Below, one piece after another: positions 2,185 to 12,235 of a stretch of DNA of 14,421 nucleotides (positions are counted from its first letter, which is position 1; every line of letters begins with the position of its first letter). Below the pieces are notes generated by a model that saw only the letters and a list, made by a program, of their open reading frames with translations, was not told where the DNA came from and made no database searches. The position numbers were made by a program, and so were the translations under genes. This DNA is from Octopus sinensis (Eukaryota): NCBI RefSeq assembly GCF_006345805.1, contig NW_021825806.1, positions 1-14,421 of the forward strand, written 5' to 3'.

Positions 2185-2310
2185 AGTATATATACACTCA
2201 TATATATGTTTACTAATTACATATGTGCTTGAAAAAGTGTGTGTGTATCTATAAAGAAGTGTATGTGTGTGTTTGTGCGTACGTGCGCGTATGTGTGTAT
2301 ATACATACAT
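1780..2310. repeat. Compound microsatellite (TG, CA, TACA, TA)
   Basis: Visible simple repeats. Confidence 0.9.
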
Positions 2311-2679
2311 ATTTATACACGCTCAGGTCCATTTAAGTGAAAATAAACACTCATACATCACTTGTCTTTAACAAGTCGAATCGTTTATGTATTTTTTTTG
2401 GCGTAGTTCTACCCCGCTAGAGAGGAGAATGGAGGTTGGAATTGGTAGCGTTATTTTTTTTTTTTTTGCTTCAGTTTGTTATTTTTTTTTAGTTCTGTTT
2501 TTTTTCTATTTGCATTTTCGTTTTTTTTGTTTTTGTCTAGCGATATTTATAAACATTTGAGACATCAAAAGTACTTAATGTGTATGGTCAAAAAAAATGT
2601 TGGCATACATCTGACGCGAAGGGCCTGGTCTATCCGTTTGTGGCGGGGAGGACAGGGTGGGATTGGAACTACGTCGGGG

Positions 2680-3075: not shown

Positions 3076-3787
3076 TGTCCTCTTATTTGCATTTGCATTT
3101 ATGTACCATTTCTCCGTCTTTTTTTCCGCTCTCGTTTTCGTATACATTTGCTGCTTTCTTCTAAGGAATCTAATGCTCTTAGTTTAGTATTTCCTTCGGG
3201 AAATACTACGCTACCAATTACAATCTCCATTCTCCTCTCTGGCGAGGTAGAACTACGCCAAAAAAATACATAAACGATTCGACTTGTTAAAGACAAGTGA
3301 TGTATGAGTGTTTACTTTCACTTAAATGGACCTGAGCGTGTATAAATATGCTCCAGATTGGAGCAACCTTGAGTATAACCAGCCGAAATTGCAAAGATAA
3401 TATGGAACTCGACTGAGGAAAGAAAACTTCGAATGACCAATCCGTGTTTTTTTCTTTTCCCTCTTTTGTATCATCTGTCTGGATGTTTTGTTGTCCCTTT
3501 TTTGCATCATCTAGCAGTCTGGGAGGGAGTGCTGAAAAGTAGAGTCGTTTGATCTCTTTGAATCTCGCAAACCCGTTATAGCTACTCCTCCTAATTTCTC
3601 TAGAAATTCGAATATTATTTTTTAATACCACTGATCCATTGAACTGGATTCATCATAATCAGGTTATTATCTAACCTGTTTATACGTGTTTAAAACTTTT
3701 CCTGGAGATGGTGGAATATATGCTATGGTATGATATATGAATACATCAATAAAATTCTGCCAAAACAGAGTCCTCGATTTTATTCTG

Positions 3788-4205: not shown

Positions 4206-4418
4206 CAATGTGAAGTATATTTGCCACTTAAATGTGGCTAACCACTAAGCGTGGATGCTACTGTAGCCTGTAGCCCCAGGAGAACACCTTCTCCAGCTGG
4301 CTATTGAAAGTGTGTCAATGGCCAGCTGGAGAAGGTGTTTTCTCCTGGGGCTACAAGCTACAGTAGCATCCACCCTTAGGGGTTAGCCACATTTAAGTGG
4401 CAAATATACTTCACGTTG
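4206..4418. repeat. ~213-bp long palindrome (MITE-like or fold-back repeat)
   Basis: Arms of ~100 bp (gtgaagtatatttgccacttaaatgtggctaacc...ccagctggctattga and tcaatggccagctgg...cacatttaagtggcaaatatacttcac) around a 7-nt loop aagtgtg (4308-4314), with few mismatches. Confidence 0.92.
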
Positions 4419-5245
4419 TCGTGCAGCTACCGTTTATACCTCGTTCAGAGATTTATTATTTATTGTCTATCTCGTTTCAATGAAAAAAAACAAGAAAACA
4501 TTACGCGAATCAGAGACAGCCTTTCTGTAGATATGTATAGGTTAGCCTGAAAATGAACATATACCCACACAGCTACGTTCAGTATAATGAGACGAAGACG
4601 TCATCAGATCTCAGAATTGCTTCAACGCGTAGAAAATGTGCCCGTCTCAAAGGTACCTGGATATGAAATCTGATATTTTGACAAATGTAGGCACTTCAAG
4701 CAACACTTGATAGAATTTATCACCACCGCCAAATTAGACACAACAACCTGCTATGCAACATAAGAGAGACCCGTGAAGACATTTCAACGTTGAACTTTAC
4801 TGCTACGGAGCAGTAGCATCGTATTTCCATTTATTCTACATTCTTTTAATATTTCATTTCTGACGTTTTTACCTTTGTTCTTAAACCTTCGTTCTCTCGA
4901 CACATCACTCATCAGCACACATCTCATGGATCTGCGAACATCCATTGCCTCATAGACACGTAGATTCACTTGGGCTTTTTGCTTTAACACTTTCAGCTTC
5001 TTGTCCATCCATTCATCATCGTTCTCCTTTAACTTTCGGAGATATCACATGATCAAACGAAGCGGGAAGTGTTGTACAGGTATGACGAATGTAACAAACT
5101 GATTTTTGCCTTTACATTACAATACAGTAAATACGCTAAATAATAAAAGAGAGAGGGAGAGAGAGATAGACAATACAAAATGATACCAAATTTCTGTATA
5201 GATTTCTGCAAGAAAACAAAATAAATTAGAATATTGAGAGAAATA

Positions 5246-5661
5246 GGCGCAGGAGTGGCTGTGTGGTAAGTAGCTTGTTTACCAACCACATGGTTCTGGG
5301 TTCAGTCCCACTGCGTGGCACCTTGGGCAAGTGTCTTCTCCTATAGCCTCGGGCCGACCAAAGCCTTGTGAGTGGATTTGGTAGACGGAAACTGAAAGAA
5401 GCCCGTCGTATATATGTATATATATATATATGCGTGTGTGTGTTTGTGTGTCTGTGATTGTCTCCCTAGCATTGCTTGACAACCGATGCTGGTGTGTTTA
5501 TGTCCCCGTTTCTTAGCTATTCGGCAAAAGAGACCGATAGAATAAGTACTGGGCTTACAAAAGAATAAGTGCCGGGGTCGAGTTGCTCGATTTAAGGCGG
5601 TGCTCCAGCATGGCCGCAGTCAAATGACTGAAACAAGTAAAAGAGTAAAAGAGTAAAGAGT
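5246..5661 (+). mobile_element. Full-length tRNA-derived SINE (octopus-type)
   Basis: A-box-like tggctgtgtgg and B-box-like ggttcagtccc in the head, an internal (TA)/(TG) microsatellite, a conserved body shared with 7682-8078, and a short tandem tail (aaagagt)n. Confidence 0.88.
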
Positions 5662-6590: not shown

Positions 6591-6663
6591 GATCCCTTCG
6601 AGAACTAACACAAATTTTCTTTTCTCTGGAGAGAGTCATACCGTCTTAATATCTAACACACAC

Positions 6664-6744
6664 AAAGGCGGCGAGCTGGCAGAATCGTTAGCACGCCGGG
6701 AGAAATGCTTAGCGATATTTCGTATGCCGTTACGTTCTGAGTTC
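6664..6744 (+). mobile_element. 5' fragment of an octopus-type SINE (third family)
   Basis: aaggcggcgagctggcagaatcgttagcacgccggg...gttctgagttc. Its distal part is reverse-complementary to 6903-6945. Confidence 0.7.
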
Positions 6745-6750
6745 TTATAT

Positions 6751-6945
6751 ATTTCTTTACTACCCACAAAGAGCTAAACACAGAGAGGACAAACAAGGAC
6801 AGACAAACGAATTAAGCCGATTACATCGACCCCAGTGCGAGACTGGTACTTTATTTATCGACCCCGAAAAGATGAAAGGCAAAGTCGGCTTCGGCGGAAT
6901 TTGAACTCAGAACCTAACGACAGGCGAAATACCGCAAAGCATTTC
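6751..6945 (-). mobile_element. Body and 3' end of the same SINE family, inverted
   Basis: The minus strand reads gaaatgctttgcggtatttcg...gttctgagttcaaattccgccgaagccgactttgcctttcatc...gtagtaaagaaat. It overlaps the 6664-6744 fragment in sequence. Confidence 0.72.
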
Positions 6946-7060: not shown

Positions 7061-7627
7061 TTTTACCTCCGCCTTCGCTAAGGCAGGGGTATTGTTTTCA
7101 GTTGCGTTTGTCTGTTGTTTGTCCATGGAGAAGATATCTCAAGAACCGCCGGATGGATTCGGATGATCCGTTCAGGGATGTTTGACCTCGTGACTGACAC
7201 GAACTGATTGGATTTTGGTATCGATCAGGTAGCGGACAAGGATTCTGGATTATTTGTTATATTTTCTTCACTTTACGTGATTACGATCTTACGTTAACAT
7301 TCAAGTCTTTCTCAAGGCGGTAACTATTTTGTATGGTGAATTTGTTAACCTTTGCTTGGATTAGATACGGATAAATAATTTAGTACTGTTAATAAATTTT
7401 CTACGGCCACCTTCACAATCCATGACTAACAATGGGATCGATCGGGTACCAGACAAGAAGCTTCAAATAAATTTTTGAGAGCGATCGGGTTCATTTTTAG
7501 TATTCTCGTCTGTGAAAGCTGTCGAGTTTATTTCAGAAATTCTCATTTCAAAAATCAGCTCTGGCTAATTCTTGAGAGGACTTTGATGTTGCCTTGGCGC
7601 AGGTTTGCCCTCTCTGAGTGCTCTTGT
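7061..7627 (+). mobile_element. Non-autonomous Helentron-type element (HINE/DINE-1-like)
   Basis: T-rich start ttttacctccgcc with a 5' hairpin (7065-7090), a short (TTTG/TCTG)-like tract, a 3' sub-terminal inverted repeat ggcgcaggt (7596-7604) matching acctccgcc, then a 3' hairpin gccctc-tct-gagtgc and a T-rich end. Confidence 0.65.
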
Positions 7628-7681
7628 TATTATTATATTTATGCTAAGCCGAAAGGAGTTCCATCTGTATATCCAAACCAT

Positions 7682-8078
7682 CGGATGTAGCTGTATGGTA
7701 AGAAGCTTGCTTACCAACCACATAGTTCTTGGCTCCGTCTCAGTGCGTGGCACCTTGGGCAAGTGTCTTCTACTATAGCCTTAGGCCGACCAAACCCATG
7801 TGAGTGGATTTGGTAGACGGAAACTGAAAGAACCCGTCGTGTATATATATATATATATATATACATTTGTGTGTCTGTGTTTGTCCTTCCCTGTCCATCG
7901 CTTGACAACCAATGTCGGTGTACTTACGTTCCAGTAATTTAGCGGTTCGGCAAAAGTATTAGGCTAACAAAGAATATGTCTTGGGGTCTATTTGTTCGAC
8001 TAAAGGCGCTGCCTCAGCATGGCCGCAGTCAAATTACTGAAACAAGTAAAGGAAAAAAGAATAAACGAATAAAAGAAT
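7682..8078 (+). mobile_element. tRNA-derived SINE (same family as 5246-5661)
   Basis: Colinear similarity to 5246-5661, including gtggcaccttgggcaagtgtcttct, ggatttggtagacggaaactgaaagaa and cagcatggccgcagtcaaat, and an A-rich tail. Confidence 0.88.
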
Positions 8079-8124: not shown

Positions 8125-8177
8125 TATATATATATATAATTATATATATATATATATTATATATATATATATATACA
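8125..8177. repeat. (TA)n, left flank of the ribozyme array
   Basis: Visible simple repeat. Confidence 0.9.
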
Positions 8178-8325
8178 TTTATATATAGAGGGCATTATAC
8201 ATACATGCCAGGAGGCATTCTACATACACGCCATACGCTAAGAGGGACAATCAGTCATTTCTCTACCAAAAATATTACTAATCCCACCGAATGCAATTTT
8301 TCAAAGAAAGACATTAAAAATATAT

Positions 8326-8374
8326 AGACCTGTATCACAGTGATTTCATACTTACGTAATCATATCAGCAGCCT
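8326..8374 (-). ncRNA. Type I hammerhead ribozyme motif, copy 1 (core disrupted: CUGAUAUGA)
   Basis: The minus strand reads aggctg CTGATATGA ttacgtaagtat GAAA tcac t gtga TA caggtct. There is a 2-nt insertion in the core and a 1-nt loss in stem I. Confidence 0.7.
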
Positions 8375-8811
8375 GAATATACTATAATAAACAACGACCC
8401 TGCCTCGCTTAAGCGATCAGCTAACTGATCAACATCAACGAAGCACATGGGTGGGTTTATATATACTATATCCGGATGAATGGCAAACTTTTACGAATTG
8501 CATTTCGGGAGAGGAAAAGTTTTTTCGGAATAAAAATTTAGCACTTAAGGACAACTACTTAATAAGGAAAACTTAACAAGAAATTGTCAGGTAGAATAGC
8601 GTAAAAACCTCATAAGAGAAAAAATTTCGAAAATAATTATTTCTTATTGAACATATTAATTTATATATAGAGGGCATTATACATACATGCCAGGAGGCAT
8701 TCTACATACACGCCACGCCATACGCTAAGAGGGACAATCAGTCATTTCTACCAAAAATATTACTAATCCCACCGAATGCAATTTTTCAAAGAAAGACATT
8801 TAAAAATATAT

Positions 8812-8859
8812 AGACCTGTATCACAGTGATTTCATACTTACGTAATCATCAGCAGGCCT
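8812..8859 (-). ncRNA. Type I hammerhead ribozyme, copy 2 (intact consensus)
   Basis: The minus strand reads aggcctg CTGATGA t-tac-gtaa-gta-t GAAA tcac-t-gtga TA caggtct. Stem I is 7 bp (one G-U), the core is canonical, stem II is 3 bp with a GUAA loop, and stem III is AUCAC/GUGAU. The cleavage triplet is AUA, with the cut between 8819 and 8818. Confidence 0.88.
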
Positions 8860-9292
8860 GAATATACTATAAATAAACAACGACCCTACCTCGCTTAAGC
8901 CGATCAGCTAACTGATCAACATCAACGAAGCACATGGGTGGGTTTATATATACTATATCCGGATGAATGGCAAACTTTTACGAATTGCATTTCGGGAGAG
9001 GAAAAGTTTTTTCGGAATAAAAATTTAGCAATTAAGGACAACTACTTAATAAGGAAAACTTAACAAGAAATTGTCAGGTAGATAGCGTAAAAACCTCATA
9101 CGAGAAAAAATTTCGAAAATAATTATTTCTTATTGAACATATTAATTTATATATAGAGGGCATATACATACATGCCAGGAGGCATTCTACATACCGCCAT
9201 ATACGCTAAGAGGGACAATCAGTCATTTCTACCAAAAATATTACTAATCCCACCGAATGCAATTTTTCAAAGAAAGACATTTAAAAATATAT

Positions 9293-9340
9293 AGACCTGT
9301 ATCACACAGTGATTCATACTTACGTATCATCAGCAGGCCT
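9293..9340 (-). ncRNA. Type I hammerhead ribozyme motif, copy 3 (GAA instead of GAAA)
   Basis: The minus strand reads aggcctg CTGATGA tacgtaagtat GAA tcac tgt gtga TA caggtct. Confidence 0.7.
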
Positions 9341-9583
9341 GAATATACTATAAATAAACAACGACCCTGCCTCGCTTAAGCCGATCAGCTAACTGATCAA
9401 CATCAACTAAGCACATGGGTGGGTTTATATATACTATATCCGATGAATGGCAAACTTTTACGAATTGCATTTCGGGAGAGGAAAAGTTTTTTCGGAATAA
9501 AAATTTAGCAATTAAGGACAACTACTTAATAAGGAAAACTTAACAGAAATTGGTCAGGTAGATAGCGTAGATAGCGTTATATA

Positions 9584-10099
9584 TTTCCTTATTAAGTAGT
9601 GTCCTTAATTGCTAAATTTTTATTCCGAAAAAACTTTTCCTCTCCCGAATGCAATTCGTAAAAGTTTGCCATTCATCCGGATATATATATATAACCCACC
9701 CATGTGCTTCGTTGATGTTGATCAGTTAGCTGATCGGCTTAAGCGAGGCAGGGTCGTTGTTTATTTATAGTATATTCAGGCCTGCTGATGATTACGTAAG
9801 TATGAATCACTGTGATACAGGTCTATATATTTTTTAAATGTCTTTCTTTGAAAAATTGCATTCGGTGGGATTAGTAATATTTTTGGTAGAAATGACTGAT
9901 TGTCCCCTTAGCGTATGGCGTGTATGTAGAATGCCTCCTGGCATGTATGTATAATGCCCTCTATATATAAATTATATGTTCAATAAGAAATAATTATTTT
10001 CGAATTTTTTCTCTTATGAGGTTTTTTACGCTATCTACCTGACAATTTCTTGTTAAGTTTTCCTTATTAAGTAGTTGTCCTTAATTGCTAAATTTTTAT
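9584..10099 (+). mobile_element. Inverted, circularly permuted copy (~1.07 units) of the same repeat
   Basis: It is the reverse complement of ~9017-9537. It begins and ends with the same ~40 nt (ttccttattaagtag(t)tgtccttaattgctaaatttttat at 9585 and ~10060). Confidence 0.88.
9778..9824 (+). ncRNA. Type I hammerhead ribozyme motif, copy 4 (GAA instead of GAAA)
   Basis: The plus strand reads aggcctg CTGATGA ttacgtaagtat GAA tcac t gtga TA caggtct. Confidence 0.72.
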
Positions 10100-10168
10100 A
10101 TATATATACATTATATATATATATATATTATATATATATATATATTATACCATATATATCATATATAA

Positions 10169-10200
<32 letters not shown>

Positions 10201-10205
10201 CTATA

Positions 10206-10248
<43 letters not shown>

Positions 10249-10312
10249 ATGTATATATAGATGTATGTGTGTGTATTTACATACATATATATGATATATA
10301 TGCATATATATA

Positions 10313-10355
<43 letters not shown>
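10100..10355. repeat. Long interrupted (TA)n, right flank of the ribozyme array
   Basis: Visible simple repeat. Confidence 0.92.
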
Positions 10356-10357
<2 letters not shown>

Positions 10358-10534
10358 AACGAAGGTTAAATCGCTGTTGGCAACGTTTTCTTGTTTGTTG
10401 GCTGCTTTTGTTTTTTGTTTGCTTTATTGTTTTCCTTTGGTTTTTTTTTTTTGTTTTGCTGTTTTAGCCATATTTTGTTTTTCTTTTGTGGCATCCCTTC
10501 CATCTTCCGTTGACAGCAAACCACAACGGTGCTG

Positions 10535-11404: not shown

Positions 11405-11715
11405 CTGACCTACGCAAAACAGTTTCTCATTTAACTGAAATTTTGTTTCCAGTTGCTGAAATATCACCTAGCGGTAACTGTTTGCAATTCTCACATATTA
11501 AGGGAGATAATTTCATGAAATTTCGAATCAATTTCATACTAAATTATTTCTTTTCAACTGTTGAGGTGGTGACTGGGCTATTCCGATGTTTTTCAGAAGC
11601 CAAGTCATGGATATATTTCGATCCTGTAAGATTCTATTACTTAAGAGTACCCTGACCAGGTGCGCTTGTTTTATTGACATAACTTTTTACAAATTAAAAG
11701 TAGCTACTCACACGC

Positions 11716-11753
<38 letters not shown>

Positions 11754-11776: not shown

Positions 11777-12014
11777 CGTCGCCGTTTTCAAGCCTAGCTA
11801 GGCTCATGGGCCCGGTTTCCCGGTTTCTGTGACGTATGTGTGCCCCCCCCCCAGCTGGACGGGATTCCAGTCCATCGCAGCGTTACTCAAGAAGCAATAA
11901 GAGAGAGTGAGAGAAAGTTGTGGCGAAAGAGTACAGCAGGGGTCACCACCATCCCCTGCCGGAGATCGTAGAGCTTCTAGGTGTTTCCGCTCAATAAACA
12001 CACACAACGCCCGG
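11777..12014 (-). mobile_element. 5'-truncated SINE (head missing), body plus 3' end
   Basis: The minus strand reads ccgggcgttgtg...ttgagcggaaacacctagaagctc...gctgcgatggactggaatcccgtccagctg...gggcccatgagcctagctaggcttgaaaacggc. I recognise it as an octopus SINE body, and the gcgatggactgg..cc.gtccag motif resembles V-SINE central domains. Confidence 0.6.
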
Positions 12015-12015
12015 T

Positions 12016-12096
<81 letters not shown>
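12015..12096. repeat. (GT)n microsatellite
   Basis: Visible simple repeat. Confidence 0.95.
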
Positions 12097-12099: not shown

Positions 12100-12235
12100 T
12101 TTTGTGTCGGAACGACCAACCGCTTGATAACTGGTTTTTGGCTTTATACATCGCATAACTTAGTTGTTCGGCAAAAGAGACCGATAGAATAAGTGCCAGA
12201 CTTTTAAGAAAAATTGCTACTTGGATCGATTCATC
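12100..12235 (+). mobile_element. 3' half of the 5246-type SINE, degenerate
   Basis: ccgcttgataactgg...aacttagttgttcggcaaaagagaccgatagaataagt matches 5475-5548. Confidence 0.75.

What the first reader, a model, noticed from the sequence alone, without database searches (positions are those of the whole stretch)
8178..10099. Tandem ~485-bp repeat with a type I hammerhead ribozyme in every unit: candidate cephalopod non-LTR retrozyme / circular RNA system
Seen: four copies of a non-coding unit, each with stem I-CUGAUGA-stem II-GAAA-stem III-AUA-stem I. Copy 2 (8812-8859, minus) fits the hammerhead consensus at every core position. Established: tandem metazoan repeats with type I hammerheads include newt satellite 2, Schistosoma Sm-alpha, the Dolichopoda pDo500 satellite and the non-LTR retrozymes of axolotl, coral and mussel. 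Their multimeric transcripts self-cleave into monomers, which in retrozymes circularise, and they are thought to be mobilised by Penelope-like elements. Inference: a minus-strand transcript would cleave at ~8333, ~8819 and ~9300 to release ~485-nt monomers, possibly a circRNA family. I cannot tell whether this family is already catalogued.
Basis: partly seen in the sequence, partly recalled or inferred. Interest (0 to 1): 0.95.

Follow-up and report, generated by a model that had tools for sequence, protein, structure and literature searches.

The report
Octopus tandem repeat carrying hammerhead ribozyme
A 481-bp non-coding repeat in an octopus genome carries a self-cleaving "hammerhead" RNA motif and was inserted the way Penelope-type retroelements insert, so it is most likely a new octopus member of the known "retrozyme" family, not a new kind of element.

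Summary
The repeat is real, but its layout differs from the finding. There are 2.9 units of 481-486 bp on the minus strand (9569-8171). A further 1.1 units lie inverted on the plus strand (9584-10099), joined head-to-head. Both outer ends sit in one (TA)n microsatellite.

Each unit has a type I hammerhead-like motif. Only copy 2 (8859-8812, minus) has the full catalytic core; the other three carry 1-2 nt indels in it. About 25 of 29 differences between copies are such indels, so assembly error is likely.

Copy 2 is improbable by chance (about 1e-4 to 1e-5 expected per window). Its architecture matches the cleaving axolotl HHR_Amex2: a U·U at the base of helix II, a palindromic helix III and A17. 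It is predicted to form a double hammerhead. A model built from four experimentally cleaving retrozyme ribozymes ranks the sites first in the window (E 0.004-0.03).

Rfam gives no hit at its thresholds, only 12.8 bits to HH9 within 57 nt. I could retrieve no other genomic copies, so covariation, copy number and expression are untested.

The host is an octopus. The partial tandem, the inverted 5'-truncated copy and the (TA)n target are the Penelope-like insertion signature.

Verdict: a probable non-LTR retrozyme, a new member of a known kind. Confidence about 0.65, interest moderate.

The parts
8125..8176 (.). Left part of the (TA)n target microsatellite
   Evidence: TRF 8125-8187; sequence. 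It abuts the 3'-truncated end of the minus-strand array.
8171..8332 (-). 3'-truncated unit (monomer positions 1-161). It ends in a UAUAUAUAAAU stretch that merges with the (TA)n.
   Evidence: blastn of the monomer against the window; alignment.
8333..8818 (-). Full unit (486 nt). Its 3' end carries hammerhead copy 1 (about 8373-8329), which is defective as assembled: CUGAUAUGA and a missing C in stem I.
8819..9299 (-). Full unit (481 nt). Its 3' end carries the enzyme part of the intact hammerhead copy 2.
   Evidence: Fold -129.5 kcal/mol, z about -6.
8805..8868 (-). Intact type I hammerhead (copy 2):
- Stem I 5' strand: 8868-8862 plus 8859-8853, with a UC bulge at 8861-8860.
- CUGAUGA: 8852-8846.
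- Helix II: U·U (8845/8834), then UAC/GUA, with a GUAA loop at 8841-8838.
- GAA: 8833-8831. A15.1: 8830.
- Palindromic helix III: 8829-8821. U16.1: 8820. A17: 8819.
- Cleavage falls between 8819 and 8818.
- Stem I 3' strand: 8818-8805.
   Evidence: Sequence; descriptor scan; folds and cofold; HH9 alignment in the same register; model R1 13.5 bits, E 0.03.
9300..9569 (-). 5'-truncated unit (monomer positions about 211-481) with hammerhead copy 3 (9339-9296). It is defective as assembled: U10.1 lost, GAAA reduced to GAA, and a TG duplication in helix III.
   Evidence: R1 7.9 bits.
9570..9583 (.). Head-to-head junction between the two 5'-truncated ends. It consists of a 9-nt duplication (ACGCTATCT) and a TATATA filler.
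   Evidence: Sequence. The palindrome it creates gives the spurious MIR8562 match at 9437-9683.
9584..9817 (+). Inverted 5'-truncated unit (monomer positions 243-481) with hammerhead copy 4 (9779-9822). It has GAA instead of GAAA as assembled.
   Evidence: R1 16.4 bits, E 0.004.
9818..10099 (+). 3'-truncated unit on the plus strand (monomer positions 1-283). It ends at AAAUUUUUAU and joins the (TA)n.
10097..10358 (.). Right part of the (TA)n target microsatellite
   Evidence: TRF; sequence.

Best explanation
The segment 8171-10099 is one insertion of a non-autonomous, non-coding retroelement of the non-LTR retrozyme type in an octopus genome. The unit is about 481 nt and contains a type I hammerhead ribozyme.

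Inferred life cycle:
1. A multimeric sense transcript is made (the minus strand here).
2. Helix III of a single motif is weak, so motifs of neighbouring units pair through the palindromic AUCAC-U-GUGAU to form a double hammerhead.
3. The double hammerhead cleaves after A17 (AUA|C), releasing about 481-nt monomers with 5'-OH and 2',3'-cyclic phosphate ends.
4. A host RtcB-type ligase can circularise these monomers.
5. The RNA, multimeric or circular, is copied into DNA by the reverse transcriptase and GIY-YIG endonuclease of a Penelope-like element. Priming occurs from both cut strands of a (TA)n microsatellite at A/U-rich stretches of the RNA.

This priming explains the partial tandem, the two 5'-truncated ends that meet head-to-head, and the two different 3' end points (monomer positions 161 and 283).

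What is shown: the motif, the repeat layout, the flanks and the octopus origin. What is inferred: transcription, cleavage, circularisation and the identity of the mobilising element. As assembled, only one of the four cores at this locus is intact, so this particular copy may be partly or wholly dead.
For: - Complete hammerhead core and three helices in copy 2. It is the only descriptor match in the window, with a chance expectation of 1.3e-4 (relaxed) or 1.4e-5 (as good) per window.
- The architecture equals that of the experimentally self-cleaving axolotl HHR_Amex2: CUGAUGA-U-3 bp-loop-3 bp-U-GAAA-palindromic helix III-UA|. That motif also has a U·U at the base of helix II and cleaves better as a dimer (PMC7229834).
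- Metazoan type I hammerheads typically have a helix I of about 6 bp, a helix II of 4 bp and a short palindromic helix III that acts in dimers (PMC4209133). Here helix I is 7 bp followed by a bulge, helix II has 4 positions, and helix III is palindromic.
- The cofold of two motifs gives the double hammerhead at -33.7 kcal/mol, against 2 x -13.0 for two single folds. The single-motif hammerhead fold is only 0.24% of the ensemble.
- Model R1, built from the four cleaving retrozyme hammerheads (coral, mussel, two axolotl), ranks copies 4 and 2 first in the window (16.4 and 13.5 bits; E 0.004 and 0.03). The best background hit scores 8.2 bits.
- Rfam HH9 aligns copy 2 in the same register, though far below threshold.
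- The unit is non-coding, about 34% GC and tandem.
- The layout is a partial tandem plus an inverted 5'-truncated copy inside (TA)n. This equals the signature described for Penelope-like elements, including the (TA)n preference of Naiads, which occur in Octopus spp. (PMC8557442).
- A Penelope-like element protein cleaves and extends both target strands in vitro (PMC11167929).
- Octopus vulgaris has recently active Penelope families (PMC13282606).
- The host is an octopus.
- A probable fossil canonical type I hammerhead lies inside a 352-bp partial tandem in 80 kb of O. bimaculoides DNA (L001 2962-3008; 28.4 bits, E 5.5e-6). Such elements therefore seem to exist in octopus genomes.
Against: - There is no Rfam hammerhead hit at gathering score, nor at E<=10 in 2.3 kb or 96 nt. 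The only match is 12.8 bits against a gathering score of 52, within a 57-nt search space.
- Three of the four cores carry indels at essential positions as assembled.
- The 10.1/11.1 pair is U·U instead of the conserved G-C, and the canonical loop 1-loop 2 contact nucleotides are not evident.
- R1 scores copy 4, which lacks A15.1, above the intact copy 2, so its score does not measure catalytic competence. Its E-values are rough and only weakly significant.
- Folding stability is not distinctive. Unit B has z about -6, unit C only -3.6, and 5 of 26 background segments reach z <= -4.
- I obtained no other genomic copy, so there is no covariation, copy number or expression evidence.
- The unit (481-486 bp) is slightly above the 150-450 bp range given for retrozymes.
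- No Penelope-like element ORF is in the window.
Confidence: 0.65

Rival explanations
1. Dead relic. The motif is a genuine hammerhead by descent and the array was made by retrotransposition. However, the family, or at least this locus, is no longer active: the broken cores in copies 1, 3 and 4 are real mutations, and no monomeric or circular RNA is produced.
For: - Three of the four cores are disrupted as assembled.
- Changes are about 2.6 times denser in the 48-nt motif than in the rest of the unit (my count).
- A clearly decayed hammerhead exists elsewhere in an octopus genome.
- The Rfam score is very low.
Against: - Units are 96-97% identical, so the insertion is young.
- About 25 of 29 differences are 1-2 nt indels in homopolymers or dinucleotide runs, against 4 substitutions. 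This looks like long-read assembly error more than mutation.
- Copy 2 is intact. In a double hammerhead its enzyme half could act on the intact cleavage sites of its neighbours (inference).
Confidence: 0.2
2. Ordinary satellite or segmental tandem duplication. The hammerhead-like string in one copy arose by chance, and the inverted copy arose by a local rearrangement.
For: - There is no Rfam hit at curated thresholds.
- Only one copy fits the motif.
- At genome scale, about 5e9 bases on both strands, the random rates predict roughly 20 relaxed and 2-3 equally good chance matches.
- No comparative support could be obtained.
Against: - The chance expectation for one 481-nt unit is about 4e-6 (derived).
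- The motif sits in exactly the genomic context in which metazoan type I hammerheads are found.
- The other three copies differ from it only by small indels, so the motif belongs to the unit.
- Both array ends are 3'-truncated at different unit positions inside one (TA)n, and the 5'-truncated ends meet head-to-head. This fits target-primed reverse transcription, not unequal crossing-over.
Confidence: 0.08
3. A fragment of another hammerhead-bearing element, not a retrozyme. It could be the pseudo-LTR of an autonomous Penelope-like element, or a SINE-like element with a hammerhead such as Schistosoma Sm-alpha.
For: - Pseudo-LTRs of Penelope-like elements carry hammerheads and occur in tandem or inverted arrangements.
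- A 2026 preprint finds retrozymes closely related to pseudo-LTRs of Penelope-like elements.
Against: - No RT or GIY-YIG coding remnant lies in or near the array (Pfam; tblastn with the Poseidon_Ac RT-EN).
- The repeat period equals the whole 481-nt unit, not a 3-4 kb element.
- There is no tRNA-like head.
- Hammerheads in Penelope-like elements usually have a long helix II, a short helix I and a conserved G10.1-C11.1, unlike this motif.
Confidence: 0.05
4. The inverted part (9584-10099) is an assembly artefact, a fold-back chimera of long reads. The true locus is then a simple tandem array.
For: - The indel-rich differences suggest an error-prone long-read assembly.
- Complex Penelope-like element structures are known to trouble assemblies.
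Against: - The palindrome is not perfect. A 46-nt asymmetric centre holds unit sequence, a 9-nt duplication and TATATA.
- The right arm ends at a different unit position (283) directly in a 260-bp (TA)n that continues into unique flank.
Confidence: 0.02

Closest known systems
Axolotl non-LTR retrozyme Rtz353 with HHR_Amex2 (Cervera & de la Pena 2020, PMC7229834)
   Same: Both are type I hammerheads in an AT-rich, non-coding tandem unit. Both have a U·U mismatch at the base of a 3-bp helix II, a palindromic helix III, A at position 17, and a predicted or demonstrated need to act as a dimer.
   Different: The hosts belong to different phyla and the units share no sequence similarity. The unit here is 481 bp against 353 bp. 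Loop 2 here is a GUAA tetraloop, and helix III has 4-5 bp instead of 3. Cleavage and circRNAs are demonstrated for the axolotl element and untested here.
Mussel (Mytilus galloprovincialis) retrozymes, 350-390 bp
   Same: Both hosts are molluscs. Both are tandem non-coding repeats with a type I hammerhead that lacks most canonical loop-loop contact nucleotides.
   Different: The mussel hammerhead has a canonical G10.1-C11.1 pair and a 4-bp helix II. About 5000 copies and abundant circRNAs are shown for the mussel, whereas copy number and expression are unknown here.
Newt satellite 2, Dolichopoda pDo500 and Schistosoma Sm-alpha hammerhead repeats
   Same: All are type I hammerheads within repetitive DNA whose multimeric transcripts self-cleave. 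The roughly 500-bp unit size of pDo500 is close to this one (unit size from my own knowledge, not checked here).
   Different: Those hammerheads reach Rfam thresholds and have canonical helix II and loops. This motif does not reach the Rfam thresholds.
Penelope-like elements (canonical clades and Naiad)
   Same: The insertion signature matches: 5' truncation, partial tandem, an adjacent inverted 5'-truncated copy, and a (TA)n microsatellite target. The protein uses both target strands as primers.
   Different: There is no RT or GIY-YIG ORF, so this is at most a non-autonomous passenger. Naiads, the (TA)n-preferring clade reported in Octopus spp., themselves lack hammerheads.

Membership tests
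Hammerhead ribozyme, type I | Conserved core C3 U4 G5 A6 N7 G8 A9 / G12 A13 A14 / A15.1-U16.1 / H17, in the right order | tested here: met
   Met in copy 2 (8852-8819, minus). Not met in copies 1, 3 and 4 as assembled; each has indels in CUGAUGA and/or GAAA.
Hammerhead ribozyme, type I | Three helices around the core, with helix I open-ended | tested here: met
   Helix I has 7 bp, a UC bulge, then 7 bp. Helix II has 3 bp plus U·U and a GUAA loop. Helix III has 4-5 bp and is palindromic.
Hammerhead ribozyme, type I | G10.1-C11.1 pair at the base of helix II | tested here: not met
   The pair is U·U (8845/8834). The same deviation exists in the self-cleaving axolotl HHR_Amex2, so it is not disqualifying.
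Hammerhead ribozyme, type I | Loop 1-loop 2 tertiary contact nucleotides | tested here: inconclusive
   The geometry is close to the canonical 6 bp / 4 bp. Loop 2 is a GUAA tetraloop, and the partner in helix I is only a UC bulge. Mussel retrozyme hammerheads also lack most of the canonical contact nucleotides.
Hammerhead ribozyme, type I | Score at or above the gathering threshold of an Rfam hammerhead model | tested here: not met
   There are no hits at gathering score or at E<=10 in 2.3 kb or 96 nt. Hammerhead_HH9 scores 12.8 bits against a gathering score of 52, within 57 nt. My own model, built from four cleaving retrozyme hammerheads, scores 13.5-16.4 bits, E 0.03-0.004.
Hammerhead ribozyme, type I | Core conservation and compensatory helix changes across independent copies | not testable with these tools
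   No other copy was found in the metagenome or viral collections, among predicted proteins, or in 80 kb of O. bimaculoides DNA. The four local copies are near-identical.
Hammerhead ribozyme, type I | Mg2+-dependent self-cleavage at H17 | not testable with these tools
   This needs in vitro transcription of monomer and dimer constructs.
Non-LTR retrozyme (metazoan) | Short non-coding tandem unit (150-450 bp) of low GC, each unit with a type I hammerhead | tested here: inconclusive
   The unit is tandem, non-coding and about 34% GC. It is 481-486 bp, slightly above the quoted range. The motif is in every unit but intact in only one.
Non-LTR retrozyme (metazoan) | No LTRs and no coding capacity (non-autonomous) | tested here: met
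   The array abuts the microsatellite directly. There are no Pfam domains and no RT or EN similarity. Primer-binding-site and polypurine-tract motifs were not searched.
Non-LTR retrozyme (metazoan) | Many dispersed arrays in the genome | not testable with these tools
   No eukaryotic genome collection was available. There were 0 copies in three O. bimaculoides loci totalling 80 kb.
Non-LTR retrozyme (metazoan) | Expressed as linear and circular monomer RNAs | not testable with these tools
   No transcriptome data were accessible.
Insertion mediated by a Penelope-like element | 5' truncation, a partial tandem, and an inverted 5'-truncated copy at the 5' end | tested here: met
   The minus-strand array starts at monomer position about 211 and the plus-strand piece at 243, joined head-to-head. 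The 3' ends are at monomer positions 161 and 283. This matches the description in PMC8557442.
Insertion mediated by a Penelope-like element | Microsatellite target, (TA)n for Naiads | tested here: met
   (TA)n flanks both sides, at 8125-8176 and 10097-10358.
Insertion mediated by a Penelope-like element | 30-40 bp 'tail' extension at one end | tested here: inconclusive
   Only a 14-nt filler (a 9-nt duplication plus TATATA) is seen at the inner junction. The outer ends are hidden in the microsatellite.

The most novel reading that the evidence does not exclude
Octopus genomes may host a young, still active circRNA-producing retrozyme family. Its hammerhead (U·U helix II base, GNRA loop 2, double-hammerhead helix III) escapes the Rfam models. 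The family would be mobilised not by hammerhead-bearing canonical Penelope-like elements but by the hammerhead-less, (TA)n-targeting Naiad clade. This locus would then be a snapshot of twin-primed reverse transcription of a multimeric or circular RNA into a microsatellite.
Probability: 0.25. Interest if true: 0.6.

Novelty: new member of a known kind. Interest (0 to 1): 0.4.

Why it matters
If confirmed, this would extend hammerhead retrozymes to octopuses. I found no paper describing them in cephalopods. The closest record is 235 Rfam Hammerhead_1 hits listed for the giant squid genome. A detailed O. vulgaris repeat annotation mentions neither ribozymes nor retrozymes.

It would also show that Rfam-threshold annotation misses such families. 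This locus gives unusually clean locus-level support for the idea that retrozymes are passengers of Penelope-like elements, because it carries their full insertion signature without their ORF. The practical consequence would be a class of abundant small circular RNAs to look for in octopus transcriptomes. It would not be a new mechanism.

Tried and rejected
Searches that found nothing:
- Rfam on the whole window, on 2.3 kb and on 96 nt gave no hammerhead. The MIR8562, mir-1002 and MIR1878 'hits' at 9437-9683 are only the head-to-head palindrome. The mir-297, mir-1277 and similar hits are (TA)n.
- Exact and degenerate scans for the motif in the metagenome and viral contig collections found 0 matches.
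- I tried to reach other genomic copies through spurious ORFs. Concatenated unit ORF translations searched against 5.8 billion proteins gave no hit. An exact look-up of a 190-aa window ORF was not on record.
- Three O. bimaculoides loci (80 kb) contain no copy of the unit and no intact hammerhead.
- To reach octopus Penelope-like elements I searched with the published Poseidon_Ac RT-EN. It returned 4581 hits, but the 120 listed contain no octopus protein. tblastn found no Penelope-like element remnant in the window or the loci.
- Pfam on the ten longest complex ORFs of the window found nothing above cut-off.

Evidence I downgraded:
- Folding stability as evidence for a structured sense RNA. 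Unit B has z about -6, but unit C only -3.6. Background segments reach -4 to -9.5, and the strand asymmetry is largely compositional.

Readings considered and rejected:
- tRNA-derived SINE: there is no tRNA.
- Fold-back assembly chimera: the centre is asymmetric and the end points differ.
Full report
**Observation**

Tandem Repeats Finder reports a 481-bp period array at 8177-9569, with 2.9 copies, 96% matches and 2% indels. Repeat finding, reading of the sequence and blastn of one monomer against the window show a more complex layout than the finding states. I number the monomer from the predicted cleavage site: position 1 is the C after GUGAUA and position 481 is A17.

The minus strand carries:
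- a 5'-truncated unit at 9569-9300 (monomer positions about 211-481);
- two full units at 9299-8819 (481 nt) and 8818-8333 (486 nt);
- a 3'-truncated unit at 8332-8171 (positions 1-161).

The plus strand carries, in inverted orientation:
- a 5'-truncated unit at 9584-9817 (positions 243-481);
- a 3'-truncated unit at 9818-10099 (positions 1-283).

The two 5'-truncated ends meet head-to-head at 9570-9583. That junction holds a 9-nt duplication and TATATA. The two outer 3' ends run straight into (TA)n, at 8125-8176 on the left and 10097-10358 on the right.

The region has about 34% GC, no ORF above 57 aa and no tRNA. The strongest Rfam 'hit' in the region, MIR8562 at 9437-9683, is simply the hairpin formed by the inverted junction.

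**The hammerhead motif**

On the minus strand, copy 2 reads 5'-AGUAUAU-UC-AGGCCUG-CUGAUGA-U-UAC-GUAA-GUA-U-GAA-A-UCAC-U-GUGA-U-A|CAGGUCU-AUAUAUU-3' (8868-8805). Its features are:
- All strictly conserved core positions are present: C3-A9, G12-A14, A15.1-U16.1 and H17 = A.
- Helix I has 7 bp, a 2-nt bulge, then 7 more bp.
- Helix II has a U·U, then 3 bp, capped by a GNRA loop.
- Helix III is the palindrome AUCAC-U-GUGAU.

The other three copies are not intact as assembled:
- Copy 1 has CUGAUAUGA and lacks a C in helix I.
- Copy 3 lacks U10.1, has GAA instead of GAAA, and has a TG duplication in helix III.
- Copy 4 has GAA instead of GAAA.

Across all units I count about 25 indel events, nearly all 1-2 nt in homopolymers or dinucleotide runs, against only 4 substitutions. 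That ratio is unlike ordinary divergence and suggests unpolished long-read sequence. The state of the three 'broken' cores is therefore uncertain (inference).

**Is it more than chance?**

A deliberately relaxed type I descriptor allows any 10.1/11.1 pair and requires helix I >=5 bp, helix II >=3 bp and helix III >=3 bp. It matches only copy 2 in both strands of the window. In 2e9 random bases of the window's composition it matched 9 times, and once with helices as good as here. That is 1.3e-4 and 1.4e-5 expected per window. An even looser descriptor again finds only copy 2, and nothing in 80 kb of octopus DNA. A whole octopus genome would still hold a handful of chance matches. The chance that one falls inside a given 481-nt tandem unit is about 4e-6.

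**Database models**

Rfam gives no hammerhead hit at gathering scores, nor at E<=10 in 2.3 kb or 96 nt. Only when the search space is 57 nt does Hammerhead_HH9 appear, at 12.8 bits (gathering score 52, E 0.53). It is aligned in exactly the proposed register, with the U·U flagged as non-canonical.

To ask a more pertinent question I took four retrozyme hammerheads that were shown to self-cleave: coral Amil224, mussel Mg353, and axolotl Ax353 and Ax330. They come from Supplementary Table 2 of PMC7229834. I aligned them, built covariance model R1 and searched the window with filters off:
- The two best hits are copy 4 (16.4 bits, E 0.004) and copy 2 (13.5 bits, E 0.03).
- Copy 3 scores 7.9 bits.
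- The best unrelated hit scores 8.2 bits.

This is weak but positive. Because copy 4 lacks A15.1 yet scores highest, the score reflects overall shape, not catalytic competence. The model's E-values are also rough.

**Precedents for the odd features**

The axolotl HHR_Amex2 reads CUGAUGA-U-GCC-CACUA-GGC-U-GAAA-CACGUG-UA|. It has the same U·U at the base of a 3-bp helix II, a palindromic helix III and A17. It self-cleaves (22% in 1 h as a monomer) and cleaves much better in dimeric constructs. Metazoan type I hammerheads generally have a helix I of about 6 bp, a helix II of 4 bp and a short palindromic helix III that makes them act as dimers. Mussel retrozyme hammerheads also lack most canonical loop-loop nucleotides.

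Here the single-motif hammerhead fold is 2 kcal/mol above the MFE and accounts for 0.24% of the ensemble. Two motifs cofold into the classical double hammerhead at -33.7 kcal/mol, against 2 x -13.0 for two single folds.

In that structure each active site combines the enzyme half of one unit with the cleavage site of the other. So even a single intact enzyme half (copy 2) could in principle act on the intact cleavage sites of copies 1 and 3. This is inference only.

**Global RNA structure**

The 481-nt sense monomer folds to -129.5 kcal/mol (z -6.1 to -6.3), with helix I closing the molecule. The antisense strand gives -93.6 kcal/mol (z -3.1). The neighbouring unit's sense strand reaches only z -3.6, and 5 of 26 background 481-nt segments reach z <= -4. 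The strand asymmetry is largely compositional. I treat this as compatible with a structured RNA, not as evidence for one.

**Host and context**

A roughly 400-bp dispersed repeat in the window (5243-5656 and 7687-8064) matches Octopus bimaculoides proteins when translated. It is present in many copies, up to 92% identical, in three O. bimaculoides loci fetched from GCA_001194135.2. The window therefore comes from an octopus, and 'cephalopod' is confirmed.

None of those 80 kb contains the 481-bp unit. R1 does find a 28.4-bit match there (E 5.5e-6) at L001 2962-3008. It has canonical helices I (6 bp), II (4 bp with a 6-nt loop) and III, but UUGAUAA and AAAA in place of CUGAUGA and GAAA. It lies inside a 352-bp unit repeated 1.3 times, with direct repeats at 2746-2849 and 3098-3201 that are 80% identical. 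Rfam misses it. I read it as a probable fossil retrozyme hammerhead. If so, such elements have a history in octopus genomes.

**Mechanism of insertion**

The literature describes insertions of Penelope-like elements as highly 5'-truncated and arranged in partial tandems. They often have an inverted 5'-truncated copy adjacent at the 5' end. The Naiad clade, which is reported in Octopus spp., prefers (TA)n microsatellites (PMC8557442). A purified Penelope-like element protein cleaves and extends both target strands and initiates reverse transcription internally on its template (PMC11167929). O. vulgaris has recently active Penelope families (PMC13282606).

The present locus shows every one of these hallmarks without any RT or GIY-YIG coding remnant. 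The two 3' junctions lie at different A/U-rich positions of the unit, 161 (UAUAUAUAAAU) and 283 (AAAUUUUUAU). This is what priming by (TA)n DNA ends on a template without a fixed 3' end would give, that is, on a multimeric or circular RNA (inference).

A fold-back assembly artefact is unlikely. The centre of the palindrome is a 46-nt asymmetric segment, and the right arm ends at its own position in 260 bp of (TA)n that continues into unique flank.

**Comparison and membership**

The element works like, and most probably is, a metazoan non-LTR retrozyme (PMC7229834). [quoted passage not shown]
- Defining features met: a type I hammerhead with a complete core in one copy; a low-GC, non-coding tandem unit; no LTRs; the insertion signature of Penelope-like elements.
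- Not met: Rfam thresholds and G10.1-C11.1. The latter has a functional precedent in the axolotl motif.
- Untestable here: multicopy distribution, covariation, cleavage and circRNA.
- Unit length (481-486 bp) is slightly above the quoted 150-450 bp.

**Novelty and verdict**

I found no paper describing hammerhead retrozymes in cephalopods. The giant squid genome paper lists 235 Rfam Hammerhead_1 hits without analysing them. This is therefore a probable new member of a known kind, not a new kind. My confidence in the retrozyme reading is about 0.65. A further 0.2 goes to the same element being a dead relic. Interest is 0.4.

The most novel reading not excluded is an active family with an Rfam-invisible hammerhead that is mobilised by the hammerhead-less, (TA)n-targeting Naiad clade. 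I give it about 0.25 probability. None of the steps I took or left out was of the kind that needs referral.

Noticed in passing
window 5243-5656 and 7687-8064; fragments at 188-291 and 12120-12198: A roughly 400-bp dispersed SINE-like repeat. The two window copies are 79% identical to each other. It is up to 92% identical to copies in O. bimaculoides loci, for example L001 2050-2463, with several copies per 25 kb. Its translations hit annotated O. bimaculoides 'uncharacterized proteins', which therefore probably contain repeat-derived exons.
   Followed up: partly
L001 2962-3008 (+), O. bimaculoides CM046609.1, about 80.98 Mb: A probable fossil canonical type I hammerhead: GCGGCA-UUGAUAA-GUCA-AAACAA-UGAC-AAAA-CAUCAAUG-UC|UGUCGC. 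It scores 28.4 bits (E 5.5e-6) with my model R1. It has three core substitutions (C3U, G8A, G12A). It lies inside a 352-bp unit repeated 1.3 times, with direct repeats at 2746-2849 and 3098-3201 (80% identical). Rfam does not detect it.
   Followed up: partly
window 8171-10099: Differences between repeat copies are dominated by 1-2 nt indels in homopolymers and dinucleotide runs: about 25 events against 4 substitutions. This suggests unpolished long-read assembly in this region.
   Followed up: partly
window 4206-4418: A 213-bp near-perfect palindrome, 91% self-complementary. It could be a MITE-like or fold-back element.
   Followed up: no
window 2308-2456 and 3201-3350: A 150-bp inverted repeat pair, 94.7% identical, enclosing about 750 bp that includes microsatellites. 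It may be the terminal inverted repeats of a DNA transposon remnant.
   Followed up: no
window 7430-7687 (+): An open frame with a sub-threshold match to the nuclear-receptor zinc finger zf-C4 (17.2 bits against a cut-off of 21.1; E 0.007). The motif reads VCESCRVYFRNS, compared with the canonical CEGCKGFFRRS as I recall it. The upstream cysteines are absent, so it is probably chance or a decayed exon.
   Followed up: no
window 6663-6945: A second dispersed repeat family shared with the O. bimaculoides loci, 80-87% identical, with several copies in L002 and L003.
   Followed up: no
window 11709-11752 and 12014-12096: Complementary (CA)n and (GT)n microsatellites about 300 bp apart give the most extreme folding z-scores in the window, -9.5 and -6.5. 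This shows that z-scores alone are poor evidence for structured RNA in this genome.
   Followed up: yes
window 9437-9683: An Rfam sub-threshold 'MIR8562' match (83.9 bits, E 6e-15, gathering score 211) and several other miRNA-family matches are artefacts of the head-to-head repeat junction forming a 250-nt hairpin.
   Followed up: yes
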